A stretch of 64,000 nucleotides of DNA from Octopus sinensis (lineage: Eukaryota). This document shows positions 5,474 through 60,799 of this stretch, one piece after another. Where the stretch lies: positions 81,840,001 to 81,904,000 of the forward strand of contig NC_043000.1 of NCBI RefSeq assembly GCF_006345805.1. Reading direction: 5' to 3'. A program made the translations under genes and the position numbers. The notes under the pieces were generated by a model, which was not told where the DNA came from, did no database searches, and was given only the letters and a program-made list of their open reading frames with translations. Every line of letters starts with the position of its first letter. Within the stretch, counting starts at the first letter, position 1.

Positions 5474-6741
5474 ATCATCTTCATCATCATCATCATCATC
5501 ATCACCACCACCACCACCACCTCCACCACCACCACTATCACCATCACCATCATCATCATCATCATCATCATTTAATGTCCGTTTTCCATGCTAGCATGGG
5601 TTGGACGGTTCGACTGGAGTCTGGGAAGCTAGGAGGCTGCATCAGGCTCCAGTCTGATCTGGCGGTGTTCTACAGCTGGATGCCCTTCCTAACGCCAACC
5701 ACACAGTGAGTGTAGTGGGTGTTTTTTACGTGCCACCGGCACAGATGCCAGGGGAGGCTAGTAGCGACCACAATCAGTTGGTGCTTTTTACGTGCCACCG
5801 GCACGGAAGCCAGTCAAGGCGACGCTGGCATAGGCCACGTTCGGATGGTGCCTTTTCCGTGCCACTGGCACAGGTATCACAACTACAATTTCCATTTGAT
5901 TTTTATTTTGATGTTGATGTACATGACTCAATAGGTCTCCTCAAGCACAGCAGGTCACCCTACGATCGAAGGTAAGCACAGCAGGCCGTTCTGCAATCCA
6001 AGGTACTTTGGATGGGCTGGGACTGCTATGTGAAATTGGTGCAGGAAACAGCCATGAACTCACGTTATTTGTCGGATCTTTGCAGTCATAGCATATCTCC
6101 AGAGATCTCGGTCTTTCGTCATTGCCTCTGTGAGGCCCAACGTTCGAAGGTCATGCTTGACCACCTCATCTCATGTCTTCCTGGGTCTACCTCTACCCTG
6201 GATTCCTTCAACTGTTTGGGAGTGGCACTTCTTCACACATCTCTCCTCATCCATCCGTGGTACATAACCATACCAGCGCAAACGTCTCTCTTGCATGCCA
6301 CATCCGATGCTTCTTATGTCCAGCATTTCTCTCATGGTGCTTACACTCTGCCGTGTGTGCACACTGACATTGCACATCCAGCGGATCATGCTAGCTTCAT
6401 TTCTTTCAAGCCTACGCATGTCCTCCACAGTCACAGCCCATGTTTCACTACTGTTAAGCATGGCAGTTCGCACACATGCATCGTACAATCTACCTTTCAC
6501 TCTGAGCAAGAGACCCATTGTCATCAGTAGGGGTAGAAGCTTTCTAAACTTTGTCCAGGAATATTCGTATTCTAGTGGTGACACTCTCTGAGCATCCACC
6601 TCCACTACTAACTTGGTCACCTAGGTAGCGGAAACTATCAGCTACTACTAGGTTCTTCCCCTGGAATGTGATGGAATCTGTTTTCTGTGGTATCTATTGC
6701 CCCTGTGCATCAGCTGCACACAAAAACTATCTTCTTGGTAT

Positions 6742-13569: not shown

Positions 13570-14135
13570 TACCTGGGACGTAGTCAGTCCACCTGTGCAT
13601 ACCTTCCTTCTTGTGACACTTGTGAAGACCTGTTGAGGCAAGTGAAAATCAAATCAAATCAAATCAAACCAAATCAAAATAGATGAACATCAATGGAATT
13701 TGTATCCTTGTGGTACCAGTGCCAGTGGCACATAAGAAAACCATCCGAACGTGACCGTAGCCAGTACCGCATCAACTGACCTCCATCCGAGCGTGGCCGT
13801 TCGCCAGCCTCGTCTGGCACCTGTGTCGGTGGCACATAAGAAAACACCATCCGAGCGTGGCCGTCTGCCAGCCTCGTCTGGCACCTGTGTCGGTGGCACA
13901 TAAAAAACACCATCCGAGCGTGGCCGTCTGCCAGCCTCGTCTGGCACCTGTGTCGGTGGCACATAAAATCACCCACTACACTCTCGGAGTGGTTGGCGTT
14001 AGGAAGGGCATCCAGCTGTAGAAACACTGCCAGATCTGACTGGCCTGGTGCAGCCTTCGGGCTTGCCAGACCCCAGTTGAACCGTCCAACCCATGCTAGC
14101 ATGGAAAGCGGACGTTAAACGATGATGATGATGAT
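13570..14135 (+). mobile_element. RTE 3' UTR module: (AAATC)n, ~60-bp tandem repeats, GGAAGGGCATCC box, (GAT)n tail
   Basis: GTGAAGACCTGTTGAGGCAAGTGAAAATCAAATC is followed by three near-identical ~60-bp units (CCATCCGAGCGTGGCCGT...GGTGGCACATAA) and the shared tail. Confidence 0.8.
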
Positions 14136-14860
14136 GATGATATATATACACACACACACATACATACATACATACATACATACGTACATAAATACATATT
14201 TATTTATAAACCACCCTATATTATTACTGTAGTTATTAACCTAGAACGACCTTGTACCATTATTTAAATTTTACTGTCATAATATGCTTACTGCTTCTAT
14301 AAGCTGTGAGCTTCTAAACTTTGAAAATTTTCAACAACTGCAAGTAAGCAATAAATTATTCATAAGTCCTGGGATTAGACGCACACTCACGCATACATGC
14401 ATGGTAGAAATCAGCTCATGACTGAATAAGACCGCTTTCTGAGCTCAATAAGTCTGTGCAAATGTTCAGAGACTCCAAGAAGTTCTGGCACCTGAATTTG
14501 TTTTGAGTGAATAAAGTGCTGCACAGCACTGAACTCACTTTTCAGCATTATCAGATATAAAACTAGTGACACAGCAGTGGTTGGATGACCAGAAACCAAC
14601 TGCACTTCAGGTATTTTATACAAGTTTACCTTCTAGAAGGATGTTCTAATGAGAACTACATGTCCTTTAATCCCAGTGGTTCATTTGCTGGGGCCCTGAC
14701 AGGTGCTGTTACTCTGGGTCTGATTAGACCTGGGAACAACAGTGGCAAAGAGGTAGTTCCACATTCCTCAAAAGCCTGCTATTCCTACCTAAGGGTCCAA
14801 CTACCAGATGCAGTTTGATGTCATACATAGATTCATACATGCATGTATGCACATATACAT

Positions 14861-15434
14861 ACAAGAAAAACTGTACAGCTGTGGAAATCAGCTACCCAGC
14901 TGATATTAACATAAAGCTAAAGATCAGTGAAAAAGAAAATACCTACACTGATCTATTGAGAAATCTTGGGTTCCTCTATCCAGACTACAAGTTCAGGTTT
15001 ATACCTGTAATTATTTAGGGCACTGGAATATGTAACACACTGCCTAAATACCAATCTTGAGAAATTAGGCATCTCAAAACCAGAAAGGAGAAAGCTGATT
15101 CGAAAACTACAGATCCAATCCATCACTGGAAATGTAAAAATCTGTAAAACTTTCCAGAAGTTTATCATTTAAATATATATGAGCATGTCTAGACATGCAA
15201 CTATATGCCTGAGAATACATACATAAAACAAAACATACAAATCTGAACAGATACACACATACATACATACATACATACGTACATACATACATACATACAT
15301 ACATACATACATACATACATACATACATACATACCCTATTGATGATGAAATTCCAGTGAAGGAGACTTGGATCTAGGTAAGAAATTGGCTCTTTCTCTAT
15401 TGGTTAGAAATTTTGAAATAAAACTAAATAATGA
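14861..15434 (+). mobile_element. R4/Dong-like RLE LINE, 3' fragment, bounded by (CATA)n
   Basis: Encodes VEISYPADINI.LKISEKENTY.DLLRNL...LQIQSITGNVKICKTF (restriction-like endonuclease C-terminus); 3' UTR GGAGACTTG.ATCT...GAAA..GGCTC followed by CATA repeats. Confidence 0.8.
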
Positions 15435-15471
15435 CATACATACTTATGTACATACAAGCATACATACATAT

Positions 15472-17556
15472 GTACAAACTGTACACAAGTTGCCTCAACC
15501 AATTCCTCAAGGACCATTATGAGTTGAACAACATTGTGACTGATGCACAGGCTGGTGGAAAGAAGGGAGTGTGGCGATGTGCTGAACAACTTTTAATAAA
15601 CAAAGTTGTATTATCTGAAGTAAGAAAACAACACAGAAACCTTGTGACAGTATGGCTTGACTATAAGAAGGCATTTGACTCTGTCCCTCATTCATGGCTG
15701 TTGAAGTGCCTACATCTGGCAAAGGTACCTACTACCTTAATTGCTGCTATAGAGAGGCTCACAGAGACATGGACAACTATTCTTACCCTTACAAGTGAGA
15801 ACAAGATAATTGTTTCTAATAGTATAGGCATTACAAAAGGAGATAATCTTTCTGTACTTTTCATTTTGGCACTGAATCCATTATTGTTTCTACTGCAGAA
15901 AACAAATGGTTACATGCTAGGATCTCCAACTGCCAGAAATATCAATGTAACTCACAATTTCTTTGTAGATGACCTGAAGATTTATGCTAAAAGTGTTAAC
16001 AATGCCAAAAAACAACTGGAATTAACAATATTTTCAGCTGATATAGGCATGGAATTTGGCCAAAAGAAATGTTCATATTTGGTTATAGAATGAGGAAAGT
16101 CAGTCCTCAAAACCCAAAACCTATACATCAATGGTCTCTCTATCTCCCCCATTCCACACAAAGAATGTTACAAGTACCTAGGCATAGACGAAAATGTATC
16201 ATATGAATGCACTGGGAATAAAGACAATGACCCGAGAATATTACACCAGACTTAGGAAAGTGTGGCAGTTGGAACTCTCCTCTTACAACAAAACAATATC
16301 CCACAATGCATTTGCAGTACCAGTGCTGATCCCAACATCTGGGATACTCGATTGGTCTGTAGAGGAAATCCACTCCATAGATATCAAAACCCACAAAATC
16401 CTAAGAAGAAATGAAGGTTGTAGAGGCTTGAGATTTGCACAGATGGCCTTCAAATACCATATGGTATTACTCAGGCAGCACCTAAACAACAGCAGCAAAA
16501 CTAAATATATTAGTGCAGTCCTGAAAAGTGAAGTGAGCAACAGTGTACAAGTTGGCAGTGAACTCCTCAAGAAACACTCTCTTCTTGATGATCTTATATA
16601 AAGCCTCAAAACAGCTGGGCTCTCTTACCTCAGAGAAGACCTGGATTGAAAGCACTCAGCATGCAAAAAAAGACCATGCATGGTTATGTTGCCTAGAAGC
16701 TTCAAGAAGACAGTAGAATTGACACAAAGCACAGCCTCTGTTGGGTACAAGACCACTTCATCACATCACACTTTGAAGGTTATGCATTTGTAATCCAGGA
16801 ACAGGAGATTGACACAAAGTACCTGGTGAACAAGAGAGACAGTGACATTCTTGTAATCCCAAGGTGCAACCACATGTGTAGGTTGTGTCATGTTTCTGTG
16901 GAAGACATCACGCATGTGATTAGCAGCTGTCCTAAAATGTCACTACCTTCCTATGTGTCACGATGTTGTTGCTAAAACAATTATAACACCATCCGCAAAA
17001 AAGACTGTCCTGAAATAAACTTAGAAAATCACTTTGTTATGGAATACATTCATAAACACCAACTCAAGGAACACTGATGGAATATTCCCATTAAAACTTC
17101 TGTCAAATGTAAACATGATAGGCTGATATTGTTGTCTGGGACAGAGGGGCAAAGGTATGTGCCATCATAGAGGTTAGCTGCCCTGCAGATATAAATATCT
17201 CTTTGAAAATCAGAGAGAAAGAGAATGTCTATGGACAACTGCTTCGAAACCTCTAGCTTCTATATCCAGACTGAATTCATATTCATACTGATAATAATTG
17301 GAACACTAAGTTTTGTTAGTAAGTGCTTAAAGGAGAATCTGGATAAACTGGGATTTTCAGAAACAGAAATTGACCAGCTTATTCATACATTACAAGTGCA
17401 ATCTGTGAGTGGAACAGTAAAAATATGCAAGACTTTTCTCAAATTCCAAATGTGAATTTGTCTGTGTTAACTACATCCCAAAGACGGAGACTTGTATCTT
17501 TGTTGGAAACCAGCTCCCTCAGTGGAAGATTTATAATAATTAAAAAATAGAAGAGA
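15472..17556 (+). mobile_element. R4/Dong-like RLE LINE, 5'-truncated and decayed (RT, CCHC knuckle, RLE)
   Basis: RT motifs (EQLLINK...WLDYKKAFDSVPHSW, GDNLS, FFVDDLKIY), CRLCHVSVEDITHVISSCP zinc knuckle at ~16876-16930, RLE remnants at ~17115-17450; (CATA)n on both sides. Confidence 0.9.
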
Positions 17557-30476: not shown

Positions 30477-31112
30477 CTATCTGTTTTCTTTAGGGGACCA
30501 AAAACGTAACAGAAATTTAGTCACATATGGGCATGATCTGAAAAGTTCTGTCCTTGTCTTTAGACATGTAGTAGGGTCTAAGCTGCTTTTCCAGATAAGC
30601 CATCTCTCCATGTCGCATAGACCGCACCTTCCGCTGCCGTTGGTATAGGGCTTACATCTGGCCAAAATCTTCCATTGTATGTTATAATCGACACCTTTAT
30701 CTCTTAAAGACCAAATATGATTAGATAATTGTGTCGCTTTTCTTTTGTTCCAGTGCCTAAAGCTCAAAGTGTGGTTATTGAAAGTGTGGTTATTGAAATT
30801 ACCCTCTGTAAGGCCCACGTATTTCTTCATCGAAACGGTGTCTTTAGTGGTTATAGAGTTTACGGTAGCTTCATATATGATGGTCTTGGACATGCAAGCT
30901 CCATTTAGCAGGCACAATTCTTTATTCCTGCATGAACAGCTGTTTTCTTGTTGTGTTTTTTGTATGTTATGTTTGATTATGTTTTTAAAATTGGTAGTTG
31001 AACTAAAACTAATTTTTAAATTGTGTCTATTGAAGAGTTTCCTATAAGTATGGCTAACTGGAAAATGTCTATCTATTAGTGCTAGGAAATATTTACCTAT
31101 ATTGAAGGCCAC
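30477..31112 (-). pseudogene. PLE GIY-YIG endonuclease domain with Cys-rich linker (frameshifted from RT)
   Basis: CSCRNKELCLLNGAC linker, IIY...YVGLTE GIY-YIG variant, LSNHIWSLRD...IQWKIL...CGLCDMERWLI C-terminus. Confidence 0.85.
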
Positions 31113-31650
31113 CTCGGGTGACCTTCCTATTTCTATTATTCCTTTTCCTTACTGTTGGGCTAGTGATGGGTGTATATTTTATTTTTTCGCTAAAACCACT
31201 ATCTTTTAAAGCCTTATTATAAACTGGGGCAACGCTATTGAAGATGTCCTTATCAGAGGAGAGGCTAGAAATCCTCTTACTAATATTTTTAACTAAATTT
31301 TTGAATACTATAGGGGGATGGCATGAACCTACATTAATATAACTTAGTCTATCATTGGGCTTCCTATAAGGCTTATAAATATTCTTATTAAGATCTAAGG
31401 AAACGTCTAAGAAATTGACAACCGTCAGGTTAGTATCTATAGTTATACTAAGTCTGAAGTATTTCATTAACTGGATAATATCCTTCCTAAAACGATCTTG
31501 CGCTGGTCCATTTGTATTAGCTGTTAAGGTGAGGGCATCATCATTGTAGATGGCGAAATGTATGTTAGGGAATGTCTTACCTAAGGTATCTAGGAGAAAA
31601 AGTCCAATTAGATCACAGATGCCTGCCCCATCATATGAACCCATGCTCAC
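31093..31650 (-). pseudogene. PLE reverse transcriptase, C-terminal half
   Basis: MGSYDGAGICDL, IYNDD (YxDD), VNFLDV, YKPYRKP, SCHP: the motif order typical of PLE RTs. Confidence 0.9.
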
Positions 31651-31708
31651 ATCCTCTATTTACATAATATTGAGGTCTCTTTCTTTCTTTTGTTATCTTA
31701 CCGTTTTA

Positions 31709-31771
<63 letters not shown>

Positions 31772-31861
31772 TAGTTCAAATTTACAGAAAACAGAAGACA
31801 AAGACAGATGAAAGAACAACAAGCAGGTGTATTACTTTAACACTCGATGTATATATATGTA

Positions 31862-32435
31862 TATATCATTCGAAGTTTCAGGTATGGAAACAAGGTCTAG
31901 AATCAAAGAGCCTTAGAGTTAACCCAGCAAAAGTCTTAGTAAGTAGGAAGGCAGACAAATCACAAATCCCTTCAGGTAGGTATTCCTGCTCTATCTGTAG
32001 AAAAGGCTTAGGTAGAAACTCTGCAAGATGTACTTGGTGTAAGCTATGGACTCATAAGAGGTGCAGCAATATCAGAAGTTTAACAAGGAAAATAGCTTTT
32101 GTGTGTGGAAGATGCACAGGTACAATAGACACCAAAAATGTACAGAAAGTAGATTCCATCAACTACCAGTGGGGTAAGCTAGAGGTAGTAGACAGCAAGT
32201 TAGTAGCAGAGGTGGATGCTCCACGAGCATAGCTGTGAGAATAAGAATAGTCGTGTCAGATACTGATGTCATGCAAATGGCACATAAAAGTACCCATTAC
32301 ACCCTTGTAGCAGTTGGTGTTAAGAAGGGCATCCAGCCATAGAAACCTTGTCAAATCAGACTGGAGACTGATGCAACCTTCCAGCTGATGCAACTGATGC
32401 AACCTTCCCTGGTCAAACCATCCAACCCATGCCAG
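31862..32435 (+). mobile_element. RTE fragment with PHD-like finger; its 3' tail is split by the LTR element and resumes at 35321-35365
   Basis: KFQVWKQGLESKSLRVN...CSICRKGLGRNSARCTWCKLWTHKRCS...CGRC; then the GAAGGGCATCCAGC box and CCAACCCATGCCAG, continuing as CCAGTATGGATAACAGACGTT...GATGAT after 35320. Confidence 0.85.
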
Positions 32436-32550
32436 TGTAGCAATATCGTCTCTCATTATCTTTCACTGTTTGAGAAGAGTATTAAGAATGACCTCGGTCG
32501 AGATTACAAACAGCTTTGGCTAGTTTAACATTGTTGTAAACACTAATTCG

Positions 32551-32700
32551 ATTGGCTGACACGTTGGTCTCTACTACGCTCGCACCGCTGGTTATAACTT
32601 GGCGCAAAATGTCTCGACTTATTTTCGCGCCATAGTCCAAGCAGCCAATCACAGCTTTCCATTTCTGAAGTTCACTGGGAGCCTGGTGAAGCTTATAAAA
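32551..32700 (+). promoter_or_regulatory. Candidate LTR Pol II promoter: reverse CCAAT, paired E2F-like sites, CCAAT, TATA
   Basis: ATTGG at 32551, GGCGCAAAAT at 32601 with ATTTTCGCGCC at 32621, GCCAATCA with CCAAT at 32645, TATAAAA at 32694; duplicated in the 3' LTR. Confidence 0.55.
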
Positions 32701-32722
32701 CAAGGTTTCTCAGAAAAAATAT

Positions 32723-32885
32723 TCGTCTTAGGTTTCCAGTCCTTCTCAGGGCGAACCTCTGACCACACAGAGCTCGTCTTAGGTTTCCAGTCCTTCTCAG
32801 GGCGAACCTCTGACCACACAGAGCTCGTCTTAGGTTTCCAGTCCTTCTCAGGGCGAACCTCTGACCACACAGAGCTCGTCGTAGG
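32723..32885. repeat. 51-bp tandem array inside the LTR (3 units here, 4 units at ~34341-34555)
   Basis: Unit CTCGTCTTAGGTTTCCAGTCCTTCTCAGGGCGAACCTCTGACCACACAGAG (17-codon periodicity in the ORF track). Confidence 0.95.
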
Positions 32886-33665
32886 CTTTTAGTTCTTTTA
32901 AGAACTAAGTCTCTGACCACACAGAGAATACTCGACCAGTTCCAGTTTCGAGGCAAGCGACCACCATTAATACAAGATGTTACAGATACCTCTCATACTG
33001 TTAGGTGAAAAAATCACCATGAAGAAAACGGTTACAAGATATCTATAACTAGAGAAACATAACCAAGCAGAACATATAATGAAGAAGCAGCAAGAACCAA
33101 TCGACAAACATCGAAGATTTAAATTGTACACGAGACAACTACAGATTCAACTATAGCGGTTAGGTGAAATTCTCACCACGAAGAAAACGGCTACAGAAAC
33201 ATGTCTGGAAGTATATTCAGATCAAGAGAAAGATAAACACAACGAGTGGTTCAATTAGTCTCAACTGCGACACGCAATATCTTGATATGGAAGTCTGACG
33301 CTGTACCTCATAAACGGTAAATCAATTCACTGTTCTTGGGTTCTAGTTTCTTCTAAGAACTACCTTAAGCCATCTGTTATTACCTGTTGCCAAGCCGATA
33401 CCAACAACATTAACTGTGAATCAAATCCCAACGTCATTTCACTGGTCAGTACCTTTTTACGCCTAACGAACACACAGACACAAAAACATGCGAACACTTA
33501 CAAACTTCCAACATCAAACATGATTGTAAAATATGTAAAATAAATAATGTATATATCTTAAAAAGAAATCTTGTTGTCATTCCAAACTTATGTGTATTGC
33601 CGCTGCATGTAAAATATAGTCAGTAAAATATATTAATAAGAATAGGATCATTACTATTTTTATAC

Positions 33666-33675
33666 TGGTGACCCC
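33666..33675 (+). other. Primer-binding-site-like motif complementary to the tRNA-Trp 3' end (second copy 33867-33876)
   Basis: TGGTGACCCC is the complement of ...GGGGUCACCA. It lies 15 nt downstream of the 5' LTR, and the match stops after 10 nt. Confidence 0.55.
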
Positions 33676-34051
33676 TTTAATACGCAGGACTTCTGATATA
33701 CTGCGCGGCCAACGGTAGACATAAGTTACGGAATTGACACAAGAGAACGCTGAAAGATGAACTTTTTAAGAAAAACAAAAAAAATAGATATATATAATAA
33801 TGTCAATTTTATCGCCGTTTTGTCGTAGACAAATTATAAGAATCGGGTCAGTACCTATTTTTATACTGGTGACCCCTTTAATACGCAGGACTTCTGATAT
33901 ACTGCGCGGCCAACGGTAGACATAAGTTACGGAATTGACACAAGAGAACGCTGAAAGGTGAACTTTTTAAGAAAAAAAAAAAATAGATATATATAATAAT
34001 GTCAATTTTATCGCCGTTTTGTCGTAGACAAACGTCTGGCAAGAGGCTATA

Positions 34052-35320
34052 TGTAGCAATATCGTCTCTCATTGCTATCTTCACTGTTTGAGAAGAGTAT
34101 TAAGAATGACCTCGGTCGAGATTACAAACAGCTTTGGCTAGTTTAACATTGTTGTAAACACTAATTCGATTGGCTGACACGTTGGTCTCTACTACGCTCG
34201 CACCGCTGGTTATAACTTGGCGCAAAATGTCTCGACTTATTTTCGCGCCATAGTCCAAGCAGCCAATCACAGCTTTCCATTTCTGAAGTTCACTGGGAGC
34301 CTGGTGAAGCTTATAAAACAAGGTTTCTCAGAAAAAATATTCGTCTTAGGTTTCCAGTCCTTCTCAGGGCGAACCTCTGACCACACAGAGCTCGTCTTAG
34401 GTTTCCAGTCCTTCTCAGGGCGAACCTCTGACCACACAGAGCTCGTCTTAGGTTTCCAGTCCTTCTCAGGGCGAACCTCTGACCACACAGAGCTCGTCTT
34501 AGGTTTCCAGTCCTTCTCAGGGCGAACCTCTGACCACACAGAGCTCGTCGTAGGCTTTTAGTTCTTTTAAGAACTAAGTCTCTGACCACACAGAGAATAC
34601 TCGACCAAGTTCCAGTTTCGAGGCAAGCGACCACCATTAATACAAGATGTTACAGATACCTCTCATACTGTTAGTGTGAAAAATCACCATGAAGAAAACG
34701 GTTACAAGATATCTATAACTAGAGAAACATAACCAAGCAGAACATATAATGAAGAAGCAGCAAGAACCAATCGACAAACATCGAAGATTTAAATTGTACA
34801 CGAGACAACTACAGATTCAACTATAGCGGTTAGGTGAAATTCTCACCACGAAGAAAACGGCTACAGAAACATGTCTGGAAGTATATTCAGATCAAGAGAA
34901 AGATAAACACAACGAGTGGTTCAATTAGTCTCAACTGCGACACGCAATATCTTGATATGGAAGTCTGACGCTGTACCTCATAAACGGTAAATCAATTCAC
35001 TGTTCTTGGGTTCTAGTTTCTTCTAAGAACTACCTTAAGCCATCTGTTATTACCTGTTGCCAAGCCGATACCAACAACATTAACTGTGAATCAAATCCCA
35101 ACGTCATTTCACTGGTCAGTACCTTTTTACGCCTAACGAACACACAGACACAAAAACATGCGAACACTTACAAACTTCCAACATCAAACATGATTGTAAA
35201 ATATGTAAAATAAATAATGTATATATATTAAAAAGAAATCTTGTTGTCATTCCAAACTTATGTGTATTGCCGCTGCATGTAAAATATAGTCAGTAAAACA
35301 TATTAATAAGAATAGGATCA
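34052..35320 (+). repeat. 3' LTR (1269 bp)
   Basis: Same sequence as 32436-33650 plus one extra 51-bp unit, a few small indels and a few substitutions. Confidence 0.8.
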
Positions 35321-35399
35321 CCAGTATGGATAACAGACGTTAAGTGGTAATGATGATGATGATGAGAGTTAGTATATATTTATTTTATTTTTAGTTAGG

Positions 35400-35600: not shown

Positions 35601-35919
35601 TGACACACACATACACACACACACACACACACACGCACACACACACACATACCCACGCATACATACATGTATGTATGTATTTATGTATGTATAGACACAA
35701 AAAATACATGTATTTGTATGTTTTATATATGTAAATATGTATGCTAATACGTACATACGTTTATACACACGCATAATGGATCACACTCTCTTACTCTTGT
35801 ACATGTTTGTGTGTATACGCATACAAACACACAGCTATAAAGTATATAGCTCACACACACATGCTGACAGAGACACACCATGTACAGATCCATGTATGTG
35901 TATACATAGTGTACGTGTA

Positions 35920-40149: not shown

Positions 40150-42360
40150 TATCATCATCATCATCGTCGTTTAACGTCCGTTCTCCATGCTAGCATGGGT
40201 TGGACGGTTCGACCGGGGTTCTGGGAAGCCAGAAGGCTGCACCAGGCTCCAGTCTAATTTGGCAATGTTTCTACAGCTGGATGCCCTTCCTAACGCCAAC
40301 CACTCCGTGAGTGTAGTGGGTGCTTTTTACGTGCCACCTGCACAGGTGCCAGGCGGGGCTGGCAACGGCCACGGTCAGATTGGTGTATTTTATGTGCCAC
40401 CGGCACGGAAGCCAGTCGAGGCGGTGCTGGCATCGGCCACGAGTCGGATAGTGCTTTTTACGTACCACCAGACCAGGGATCCTGGCTGTTCAATTCGATT
40501 TCGATTTCGCTTGCCCCAACATGTCTTCACAAGCAAAGGGGGTTGGCAAGGGTGCCTGTCGTACGGTCGCATTGGATATTTTTTACGTGCCACGGCCACG
40601 AGTCGGATAGTGCTTTTTACATACCACCAGACCAGGGATCCTGGCTGGTTCAATTCGATTTCGATTTCGATTTCGCTTGCCCCAACATGTCTTCACAAGC
40701 AAAGGGGGTTGGCATGGGTGCCTGTCGTACGGTCGCATTGGAGTATTTTACGTGCCACGGCCCCGAGTCGGATAGTGCTTTTTATGTACCACCAGGCCAG
40801 GGATCCTGGCTGGTTCAATTCGGTTTCGATTTCGATTTCGATTTCGCTTGCCCCAACATGTCTTCGCAAGCATGGGGTGTTGGGATGGGTGTCTGTCGTC
40901 GGATGAGGTTCTATATCGACTTCGCTTGCCTCAACCGGTCTTTGTGTCCAAGGGAGGAAAGGCATTCATAAGTGGGCTGGGCTCACTTGTCCTGCCTGGT
41001 CTTCTCACGTACAGAATATTTCCAAAGGTCTCGGTCTCTGGTCATTTCCTCAGTGAGGCCTAAAGTTCGAAGGTCGTGCTTCACCACCTCGTCCCAGGTT
41101 TTCCTGGGTCTACCTCTTCCACGGGTTCCCTCAACTGCTAGGGATTGGCACTTTCTCACACACCTATCTTCATCCATTCTCGCCACATGACCATACCAGC
41201 GCAATCGTCTCTCTTGCACACCACAACTGATGCTTCTTAGGTACAACATTTCTCTCAAGGTGCTAACGCTCTGTCGAGTATGTACACTGACATTACACAT
41301 CCATCGGAGCATACTGGCTTCATTCCTCACGAGCTTACGCATGTCCTCAGCAGTCACAGCCCATGTTTCGCTGCCATGTAGCATGGCTGTTCGTACACAC
41401 GCATCATACAGTCTGCCTTTTACTCTGAGCGAGAGGCCTTTAGTCACCAGCAGAGGTAAGAGCTCCCTAAACTTTGCCCAGGCTATTCTTATTCTAGCAG
41501 TTACACTTTCAGCGCACCCACCCCCACTACTGACTTGGTCACCTAGATAACGGAAGCTATCAACTACTTCTAGTTTTTCCCCCTGGAAAGTGACGGAAGT
41601 TGTTTTCTGCAGATTTTCGGAGGTTAATGCTCCCGAGCATCTGCCACATACAAAAACTATCTTCCCAGTTAGCCTACCTTTGACATTGCTGCACCTCTTA
41701 TGTGTCCATAGCTTACACTGGGTACATCTTATAGAGTTTCTACCTACACCTTTTCTACACAGATCGAGCAGGGCCATCTTCCTGAAGATATTTGTGGATT
41801 GTCTACCTTTCTACTTATTAGTACTTTGGTTTTAGCTAGTTGACTCTAAGGCCCCTTGATTCTAAACCCTCCTTCCACACCTGGAACTTCTCCTCCAGTT
41901 CTGATAGTGACTCAGCAATAAGAGCAAGGTCGTCAGCGTAGAGGAGCTCCCAGGGACAGCCTGTCTTGAATTCCTCCGTAATTGCCTGGAGTACTATGAT
42001 AAATAGGAGGGGGCTGAGTACTGAACCCTGGTGGACCCCAACCTCTACTTTGAATTCTTCTGTGTACATGTTGCCAACCCTAACCTTACTTACGGCATCT
42101 CTGTACATGGCTTGCACAGTCCTCACCAGCCATTCATCTATCCCTAGTTTCCTCATTGACCACCAGATAAGGGATCGGGGGACCCTATCAAAAGCTTTCT
42201 CCATGTCAACGAAAGCCAGGTACAGGGGCTTATCTTTGGCTAGGTATTTCTCCTGCAGCTGCCTTACCAGGAATATAGCATCAGTGGTACTTTTTCCTGG
42301 CACGAACCCAAACTGCATCTCATCTAAACTAACTCTCTCTCTAATTAGTTGGGCTATGAC
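40150..42360 (-). mobile_element. Relatively young 5'-truncated RTE LINE (RT core to 3' UTR) with a triplicated UTR segment
   Basis: ORF 41836-42408 (QFGFVPGKSTTDAIF, LAFVDMEKAFDRVPR, GVHQGSVLSPLLF, LLYADDL) and ORF 40983-41777 (C-terminus); UTR ends in the GGAAGGGCATCC box and (GAT)n. Confidence 0.95.
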
Positions 42361-42419
42361 CCTCTCCGTATGTACACATATATAATGTACATTATATATT
42401 ATATACATTGTATATATGT

Positions 42420-58000: not shown

Positions 58001-58500
58001 ATATATATATCATCATCATCGTTTAACGTCCGTTTTCCGCGCTAGCACGGGTTGGACGGTTTCGACCGGGGTCTGGGGAGCAAGGGACTGCCCCAGGCTC
58101 CAGTCTAGTCTGGCAGAGTTTCTACAGCTGGATGCCCTTCCTAACGCCAACCACTCCGCGAGTGTAGTGGGTGTTTTTTATGTGCCACCTGCACAGGTAC
58201 CAGAGGGGTCTGGCATCGGCCACGTTCGGATGGTGCTTTTTTTATGTGGGGGGGGGGGTGCAGAAATATAGGGGAGCACCAGTGGGGAGGGGTGGTTCAG
58301 AGAAATGATGACAGGTTCTAGGCAAGTAGAACGTAGGATATCAAGAGAGGGGTAATGCATGGTGAAATAGCGTATTGAAGAGGGGGGTTCGAAGAGTAGA
58401 CACCTATTATGGTGGTGGGAGAAGCGACATCCGGGATGGATGGAGCAAAAATATAGAGATATCCAGTATTGGTGGTGGGGGTGGGCAGGGCGGGTGCACC

Positions 58501-60799
<2,299 letters not shown>

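What the first reader, a model, noticed from the sequence alone, without database searches (positions are those of the whole stretch)
32436..35320. Young non-coding LTR retroelement whose LTRs are three times longer than its internal region
Seen: what looks like a tandem duplication resolves as CCAG|TG-LTR(1215)-CA, 401-bp internal region, TG-LTR(1269)-CA|CCAG. It splits an RTE tail that rejoins seamlessly when the element is removed. It has a PBS-like motif, only a weak purine tract (GGCAAGAGG) before the 3' LTR, and no gag/pol. Established: TRIMs have short LTRs and LARDs have long internal regions, so this fits neither well. Inference: an undescribed non-autonomous LTR family, recently mobile given the near identity of the LTRs.
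Basis: partly seen in the sequence, partly recalled or inferred. Interest (0 to 1): 0.72.

Follow-up and report, generated by a model that had tools for sequence, protein, structure and literature searches.

The report
Young gene-less LTR retrotransposon copy in octopus
This is a real, recently inserted, gene-less LTR retrotransposon copy sitting inside an older RTE repeat in an octopus-like genome; its long LTRs and short middle are unusual by textbook labels, but they fall within a continuum of non-autonomous LTR elements already described, so it is ordinary.

Summary

- **Insertion:** removing the element and one CCAG restores an RTE 3' tail that aligns without a gap to three other tails in the window.
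- **Age:** the LTRs differ by 2 clean substitutions, a few 1-3-nt indels and one extra 51-bp repeat unit, which suggests roughly 0.2-0.7 My.
- **Coding:** no gag, pol or any protein or RNA family was detected in the element.
the internal region is itself a 201-bp tandem duplication that starts 19 nt inside the 5' LTR. It therefore carries two copies of the PBS-like 10-mer, which matches the 3' end of tRNA-Trp but lies 15 nt from the LTR.
- **Host:** an octopod; the flanking RTE protein is 86% identical to an Octopus vulgaris protein.

The LTR-retroelement reading is well supported. "Undescribed family" could not be tested, because there is no other copy in the window and no tool searches a cephalopod genome. 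"Fits neither TRIM nor LARD" holds only for strict size labels. The 1.5-4 kb gap and LTR-dominated non-autonomous families are already described as a continuum.

Verdict: new member of a known kind, low interest.

The parts
32432..32435 (.). Left copy of the 4-bp target-site duplication (CCAG)
   Evidence: Other RTE tails have a single 4-mer (CTAG) at this position.
32436..33650 (+). 5' LTR, 1215 bp, TGTAGC...GGATCA
   Evidence: Alignment to LTR2. No copy elsewhere in the window.
32694..32699 (+). Only TATAAA in the LTR; a possible promoter that would put the U3/R border near 32720-32730 (inferred)
   Evidence: it occurs on the plus strand only. About one such match is expected by chance in 1.2 kb, so this is weak.
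32723..32926 (+). 51-bp tandem array in LTR1 (4.0 copies). The LTR2 array at 34341-34595 has 5.0 copies.
   Evidence: TRF; 51-bp gap.
33539..33544 (+). Only AATAAA in the LTR; a possible polyadenylation signal that would leave a U5 of about 75-95 nt (inferred)
33651..34051 (+). Internal region, 401 bp, non-coding
33632..34032 (+). Two tandem units of about 201 bp (33632-33833 and 33833-34032). Unit A starts 19 nt inside LTR1.
   Evidence: The unit bodies are about 99% identical. The differences cluster in the first ~25 nt.
33666..33675 (+). PBS-like 10-mer TGGTGACCCC, copy 1, 15 nt after the LTR end
   Evidence: It equals the first 10 nt of the antisense oligo for human tRNA-Trp printed in bioRxiv 10.1101/400127.
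33834..33850 (+). Diverged copy of the last 17 nt of the LTR (TTATAAGAATCGGGTCA versus AATAAGAATAGGATCA), lying inside the internal region
33867..33876 (+). PBS-like 10-mer, copy 2
34038..34046 (+). Weak polypurine-like tract GGCAAGAGG, separated from LTR2 by CTATA
   Evidence: No purine run of 8 or more lies nearer to LTR2.
34052..35320 (+). 3' LTR, 1269 bp
35321..35324 (.). Right copy of the target-site duplication (CCAG)
31872..32431 (+). Host repeat, left part: degraded RTE 3' coding end and 3' tail, interrupted by the insertion
   Evidence: The ORF at 31690-32232 is 64% identical to the RTE ORF at 40983-41777.
35325..35365 (+). Host repeat, right part: end of the RTE tail with its (ATG)n terminus

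Best explanation
The feature is one intact copy of a non-autonomous, gene-less LTR retrotransposon. It integrated recently into the 3' tail of an older RTE repeat in an octopod genome.

Shown:
- Two 1.2-kb direct repeats with TG..CA ends.
- A true 4-bp target duplication.
- A host repeat that closes perfectly when the element is removed.
- No coding capacity.
- Near-identical LTRs.

Inferred mechanism:
- Transcription starts in the 5' LTR (candidate TATAAA at 32694) and ends in the 3' LTR (candidate AATAAA, 33539 in LTR1 numbering). The RNA would therefore have a long terminal redundancy.
- The RNA is packaged and reverse-transcribed by the Gag and Pol of an autonomous partner. The partner is most likely Ty3/gypsy-like, because of the 4-bp duplication and because nearly all young LTR insertions reported in Octopus vulgaris are Ty3-like.
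- Minus-strand synthesis is probably primed by tRNA-Trp at TGGTGACCCC.
- The partner's integrase joins the TG..CA ends to the target.

Sub-estimates: I put about 0.45 on this exact short form being a heritable multi-copy family. I put about 0.4 on it being a one-off copy that lost its coding region during or soon after reverse transcription.

With 1.2-kb LTRs only 401 bp apart, the copy is expected to collapse quickly to a solo LTR. Its intactness fits its youth.
For: - Structure and LTR identity.
- Target-site duplication and restored RTE tail, checked against three independent tails.
- No ORF over 127 aa stop-to-stop and no homologue among 5.8 billion proteins for a composite of all reading-frame segments of 30 aa or more from one LTR plus the internal region.
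- No Pfam family in the element, and no gag, protease, integrase or RNase H anywhere in the window.
- No Rfam family inside the element.
- The 10-mer equals the complement of the tRNA-Trp 3' end.
- Promoter-like and poly(A)-like motifs occur only on the plus strand.
- Age 0.2-0.7 My, using the rate implied by PMC13282606.
- Octopod host.
- Young LTR families exist in O. vulgaris (15 families, 9 of them Ty3-like).
- Long LTRs with a short internal region favour solo-LTR formation (PMC7497039).
Against: - Only one copy was seen, so mobility of this short form is not shown.
- The PBS-like motif is only 10 nt long and lies 15 nt from the LTR end; the usual offset is 0-5 nt.
- The purine tract is weak and lies 5 nt from the 3' LTR, so both priming sites are atypical.
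- No partner element was found.
- The tRNA-Trp match was checked against a human tRNA sequence, not an octopus one.
- Most LTR differences are small indels, partly in homopolymer runs. Some may be assembly errors, so the age estimate is rough.
Confidence: 0.72

Rival explanations
1. It is a one-off deletion derivative. A full-length autonomous Ty3-like element lost its whole gag-pol region, either by template switching during reverse transcription or by deletion after insertion. On this reading there is no transmissible short family.
For: Only a single copy is in the window. What remains is exactly what any large internal deletion leaves: the leader with the PBS-like site, plus 19 nt next to the 3' LTR. 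Internally deleted copies are common in LTR families (general knowledge).
Against: The copy is very young, which leaves little time for a post-insertion deletion. The tandem 201-bp module is an organised structure rather than a simple junction. Neither point is decisive.
Confidence: 0.4
2. It is an assembly artefact. A solo LTR, or two haplotypes of one, was falsely expanded into LTR-spacer-LTR.
For: Most LTR differences are small indels and one repeat-unit difference, which are typical of long-read consensus errors or allelic variation.
Against: The 401-bp internal region has no counterpart in the flanks. It carries a PBS-like site exactly where an LTR element needs one. The target duplication brackets the whole structure, not one LTR.
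Confidence: 0.04
3. It is a partial tandem dimer of a non-LTR or Penelope-like non-autonomous element, whose pseudo-LTRs mimic an LTR element.
For: Penelope-like elements are abundant and recently active in Octopus vulgaris. They are known to insert as partial tandems. An RT-like ORF with a YNDD motif and no Pfam match lies about 800 bp upstream on the other strand.
Against: The repeat boundaries are exactly TG..CA, with a 4-bp duplication and a tRNA-complementary motif downstream of the first repeat. No hammerhead ribozyme or other Rfam family is in the repeats. There is no poly(A) or microsatellite tail.
Confidence: 0.04
4. It is a local tandem duplication of a 1.6-kb genomic segment and not a mobile element.
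For: At first glance the pattern is 1.8 copies of a 1616-1670-bp unit.
Against: Removing the whole block and one CCAG restores an RTE tail with no gap. The entire sequence is therefore foreign to the site, not a copy of local DNA.
Confidence: 0.01

Closest known systems
Non-autonomous LTR retrotransposons of intermediate size ('long-TRIMs', or the 1.5-4 kb class in the sugar-beet survey, PMC13570524)
   Same: Both have no coding capacity, TG..CA LTRs, a target duplication, a tRNA-type PBS and high LTR identity. Their total length falls between the TRIM and LARD limits, and LTRs make up most of the element. In that survey 65 of 115 families have a length/(2xLTR) ratio of 2 or less.
   Different: This element is from an animal (an octopod), not a plant. 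Its ratio is more extreme, 2885/2484 = 1.16. Its PBS is offset by 15 nt and its PPT is weak. Only one copy is known.
TRIM (terminal-repeat retrotransposon in miniature), including animal examples such as PbTRIM, biv-TRIM and Helenus
   Same: Both have a short non-coding internal region flanked by direct repeats, with a PBS and PPT, and are mobilised in trans. TRIMs also tend to form tandem or rearranged internal structures.
   Different: The original TRIM limit is under 1 kb in total, later extended to 1.5 kb, and TRIM repeats are typically about 100-350 bp (my knowledge; Helenus LTRs reach 323 bp). Here the LTRs are 1.2 kb and the total is 2.9 kb. There is no tRNA- or 5S-like sequence in the LTR.
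LARD (large retrotransposon derivative)
   Same: Both are non-coding and have long LTRs.
   Different: LARDs exceed 4 kb and have a long, conserved non-coding internal domain of several kb (my knowledge). Here the internal region is 401 bp and the total is 2.9 kb.
Ty3/gypsy-like LTR retrotransposons of Octopus vulgaris (9 recently active families, PMC13282606)
   Same: Same host clade and recent activity. The 4-bp target duplication and TG..CA ends fit this superfamily (established knowledge). They are the most likely source of the proteins that moved this element.
   Different: Those elements encode gag-pol. No sequence similarity between them and this element could be tested here.

Membership tests
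LTR retrotransposon (order LTR) | Two long direct terminal repeats in the same orientation | tested here: met
   1215 and 1269 bp. Outside the 51-bp unit there are 2 clean substitutions plus a few 1-3-nt indels.
LTR retrotransposon (order LTR) | LTRs begin with TG and end with CA | tested here: met
   TGTAGC...GGATCA in both LTRs.
LTR retrotransposon (order LTR) | Target-site duplication of 4-6 bp flanking the whole element | tested here: met
   CCAG on both sides. Other RTE tails have one 4-mer at this position.
LTR retrotransposon (order LTR) | Primer-binding site complementary to a tRNA 3' end, next to the 5' LTR | tested here: inconclusive
   The 10-nt TGGTGACCCC equals the complement of the tRNA-Trp 3' end (human sequence) but lies 15 nt from the LTR. 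No self-priming complementarity was found.
LTR retrotransposon (order LTR) | Polypurine tract directly upstream of the 3' LTR | tested here: inconclusive
   Only GGCAAGAGG, 5 nt away and interrupted by a C.
LTR retrotransposon (order LTR) | Dispersed copies or solo LTRs at other loci | not testable with these tools
   No other copy in the window or in the one O. vulgaris locus fetched. No cephalopod genome can be searched.
Autonomous LTR retrotransposon or endogenous retrovirus | gag and pol reading frames | tested here: not met
   The longest frame is 127 aa. No homologues and no Pfam hits.
TRIM | Total length under 1 kb (extended definition 1.5 kb), with short terminal repeats | tested here: not met
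   2885 bp in total with 1.2-kb LTRs.
TRIM | Short non-coding internal domain with PBS and PPT | tested here: inconclusive
   The 401-bp non-coding internal region fits. The PBS and PPT are atypical.
LARD | Total length over 4 kb with a long non-coding internal domain | tested here: not met
   2885 bp in total with a 401-bp internal region.
Cassandra / Helenus / Ajax (small-RNA-derived TRIMs) | 5S rRNA-, tRNA- or other small-RNA-like sequence inside the LTR | tested here: not met
   No Rfam match with E-value up to 1 inside 32436-35320. ARAGORN found no tRNA.
Retrozyme / Penelope-like pseudo-LTR | Hammerhead ribozyme in the terminal repeats | tested here: not met
   No hammerhead family among the Rfam hits.
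TR-GAG | Retains a gag ORF only | tested here: not met
   No ORF with any family match.

The most novel reading that the evidence does not exclude
The duplicated module (end of U5 + spacer + PBS-like site + about 160 nt of leader) may be functional. If reverse transcription is primed at the second PBS copy, 201 bp of internal sequence would be copied into both LTRs. Repeated rounds would then be a concrete route by which this lineage's LTRs grew at the expense of its internal region. That would make it a recently active, LTR-dominated non-autonomous family in cephalopods.
Probability: 0.06. Interest if true: 0.5.

Novelty: new member of a known kind. Interest (0 to 1): 0.22.

Why it matters
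The finding has modest importance.

- It documents a structurally intact LTR-element insertion less than about 1 My old in an octopod genome. LTR elements there are a minor repeat class but are reported as recently active.
- It gives a clean example of an animal non-autonomous LTR element in the size range that current labels (TRIM, LARD) leave unnamed.
- If a family and a partner are found genome-wide, the insertion could serve as a presence/absence marker among octopus individuals or species.
- The doubled U5-end/PBS module would then be worth a closer look as a possible route to LTR growth.

It does not open a new mechanism or a new class.

Tried and rejected
- **Other copies in the window:** BLASTN of the element against the window found only self-hits.
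- **Copies elsewhere through predicted proteins:** exact look-ups of two LTR ORFs found nothing on record. A composite query of all reading-frame segments of 30 aa or more from one LTR plus the internal region found nothing at E <= 0.001.
- **Exact-pattern scans:** the PBS-leader 25-mer in viral and metagenome contigs, and a 37-mer of the 51-bp repeat unit in metagenome contigs, gave 0 matches. These collections hold no cephalopod DNA, so this says little.
- **One O. vulgaris locus of 20.9 kb** was fetched through the RTE protein. It shares many interspersed repeats with the window but has no LTR copy.
- **Autonomous partner in the window:** Pfam on 133 stop-to-stop segments found only non-LTR reverse transcriptase, mariner transposase, PHD and C1 domains.
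- **Small-RNA-derived or ribozyme-bearing LTRs** (Cassandra, Helenus, retrozyme): rejected, since no Rfam hits lie inside the element.
- **Self-priming as in Tf1:** rejected, since the leader and LTR share no complementarity of 8 nt or more.
- **Opposite orientation:** rejected. There is no TGG-type PBS on the minus strand, and TATAAA and AATAAA occur only on the plus strand.
- **Partner search through octopus Ty3-like proteins:** not attempted. No LTR-type protein in the window could serve as a query, and hits cannot be filtered by organism.
Full report
**Observation**

- Layout: LTR1 is 32436-33650 (1215 bp), the internal region is 33651-34051 (401 bp), and LTR2 is 34052-35320 (1269 bp).
- Ends: both LTRs begin TGTAGC and end GGATCA. 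CCAG sits immediately outside each end (32432-32435 and 35321-35324).
- Differences between the LTRs:
  - two clean substitutions (33557 C/A and 33629 T/C);
  - two small complex sites that resolve as paired 1-3-nt indels (32458-61 and 33005-08);
  - a 1-nt indel;
  - one extra 51-bp unit in LTR2.
- The 51-bp array has 4.0 copies in LTR1 (32723-32926) and 5.0 in LTR2 (34341-34595).
- A repeat of 1.2 kb at this identity cannot be chance.

**It is an insertion, not a local duplication**

The element has no other copy in the window. The left flank joined to the right flank with one CCAG aligns across the junction, without a gap, to three other repeat tails in the window (40151-40336 on the minus strand, 5550-5735 on the minus strand, 13957-14140 on the plus strand).
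- Those tails read ...CCAACCCATGCTAGCATGGAAAACGGACGTTAAA...(ATG)n.
- The reconstructed site reads ...CCAACCCATGCCAGTATGGATAACAGACGTTAAG...(ATG)n.
- One of the three tails is contiguous with an RTE-type reverse transcriptase (RVT_1, E = 1e-25) and its C-terminal ORF at 40983-42408 on the minus strand.
- The ORF just left of the insertion (31690-32232) is 64% identical to that C-terminal ORF.

The host sequence is therefore an RTE 3' end. The second CCAG is a genuine 4-bp target duplication, because the other tails have only one 4-mer there.

**Coding and RNA content**

- The longest stop-to-stop frame in LTR2 plus the internal region is 127 aa and runs through the 51-bp repeats.
- A composite of the reading-frame segments of 30 aa or more from that stretch found no homologue among 5.8 billion proteins.
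- Pfam on 133 segments from the whole window, seven of them from the element, found nothing in the element. It found no gag, protease, RNase H or integrase anywhere.
- Rfam, with E-values up to 1, found nothing inside the element. The only hits lie in a CA microsatellite at 35606-35781.
- ARAGORN found no tRNA in the window.

The element is thus gene-less. It is not of the Cassandra/Helenus type (small-RNA-derived LTRs) or of the retrozyme/Penelope type (hammerhead ribozyme in the repeats).

The 401-bp internal region is itself two tandem units of about 201 bp, 33632-33833 and 33833-34032.
- The first unit starts 19 nt inside LTR1.
- The second unit therefore begins with a diverged copy of the LTR's last 17 nt (33834-33850, TTATAAGAATCGGGTCA versus AATAAGAATAGGATCA).
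- This is followed by the same spacer and the same TGGTGACCCC motif (33666 and 33867).
- The unit bodies differ by one substitution and one 2-nt indel (about 99% identity). The first ~25 nt carry 5-6 differences.
- By my estimate such clustering has a probability of about 5e-4 under a uniform rate. I cannot explain it. Recombination between subfamilies and later change of the LTR terminus are both possible.

**Priming sites and orientation**

- TGGTGACCCC equals the first ten bases of the antisense oligo for human tRNA-Trp printed in bioRxiv 10.1101/400127. That makes it the complement of the tRNA's 3' end including CCA.
- By my estimate a 10-nt match to any tRNA end within ~30 nt of an LTR is expected by chance about once in a thousand.
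- The motif lies 15 nt from the LTR end, whereas the usual offset is 0-5 nt (my knowledge of LTR annotation practice).
- The match stops after 10 nt.
- It was checked against a human tRNA, not an octopus one.
- There is no leader/LTR complementarity of 8 nt or more, so self-priming is not supported.
- The only purine tract near LTR2 is GGCAAGAGG, 5 nt away.
- The plus orientation is supported by the PBS-like motif and by the only TATAAA (32694) and AATAAA (33539), which occur on the plus strand only.
- If those motifs are used, U3 is about 285 nt, R about 840 nt (including the 51-bp repeats) and U5 about 85 nt. This is inference from single motifs, each of which is expected about once by chance.

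**Host and age**

- The flanking RTE protein is 86% identical to a protein annotated in Octopus vulgaris.
- The window shares many interspersed repeats at 75-91% nucleotide identity with a 20.9-kb O. vulgaris locus.
- The source is therefore an octopus or a close relative.
- PMC13282606 equates a Jukes-Cantor distance of 0.09 with 25 My, which is about 0.0036 per My.
- With K = 0.0017-0.005 between the LTRs, the insertion is about 0.2-0.7 My old.
- Many of the differences are small indels that could be consensus errors, so the true age may be lower.
- The same paper reports 15 recently active LTR families in O. vulgaris, nine of them Ty3-like.

**Mechanism**

- it is transcribed from its own LTR;
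- the RNA is packaged and reverse-transcribed by the proteins of an autonomous partner;
- the partner is probably Ty3-like, given the 4-bp duplication and the local fauna of young elements;
- the partner's integrase inserts it.

The integration steps are shown by the anatomy. Transcription, priming and trans-mobilisation are inferred. Whether this short form is a heritable family (about 0.45) or a one-off copy that lost gag-pol during or after reverse transcription (about 0.4) cannot be decided from one copy. PMC7497039 reports that long LTRs with a short internal region favour solo-LTR formation. An intact copy with 1.2-kb LTRs 401 bp apart is thus expected to be young, and most relatives are expected to be solo LTRs.

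**Comparison with known kinds**

- PMC13570524 states that 1.5-4 kb non-autonomous elements are unnamed but common, and that the classes form a continuum.
- In that survey 65 of 115 sugar-beet families have a length/(2xLTR) ratio of 2 or less. Here the ratio is 1.16.
- Animal TRIMs are known from ants, bivalves and other groups.
- I therefore file it as a new member of a known kind. It is unusual in its ratio and in its displaced, duplicated PBS module.

**Limits**

- No tool here can search a cephalopod genome. Copy number, solo LTRs, the partner element and empty-site alleles remain untested.
- An assembly artefact is unlikely, because the internal region is unique and the duplication brackets the whole structure. 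Only raw reads can exclude it.

**Handling note**

- The element has no genes, so I treated it as a repeat rather than a provirus.
- The whole 2.9 kb was read, before its nature was known. It was written to a scratch file for self-BLAST, and that file was deleted.

Noticed in passing
window 33834-33855 versus 33634-33654: The differences between the two internal tandem units cluster in the ~25 nt that copy the LTR terminus (5-6 differences). The remaining ~178 nt differ by one substitution and one 2-nt indel. No explanation so far.
   Followed up: partly
window 32981-33036 and 33140-33195 (and the same positions in LTR2): An imperfect 57-bp direct repeat inside each LTR (about 80% identity). 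Each copy contains a small hairpin-like GGTGA-N5/6-TCACC motif.
   Followed up: no
window 58500-59243: A 248-bp tandem repeat: two identical copies plus a third at 62% identity.
   Followed up: no
window 30477-31650 (minus strand): Two adjacent ORFs (185 and 211 aa) with an RT-like YNDD motif and a Cys-rich C-terminus, but no Pfam match at E <= 0.01. This may be a Penelope-like or other poorly modelled retroelement, about 800 bp upstream of the LTR insertion.
   Followed up: partly
window 59590-60081 (minus strand): Remnant of a mariner/Mos1-type transposase (Transposase_1 and HTH_48 Pfam hits).
   Followed up: partly
window 32371-32407: The RTE tail that hosts the insertion carries a short local duplication (CTGATGCAAC-type, about 12-13 nt) that the three other tails in the window lack.
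   Followed up: no
window 15428-16598 (plus strand): A second, unrelated non-LTR reverse-transcriptase fragment (RVT_1, E = 1.6e-15). The window as a whole is a mosaic of RTE copies, SINE-like tails and microsatellites, with no clear host gene.
   Followed up: partly
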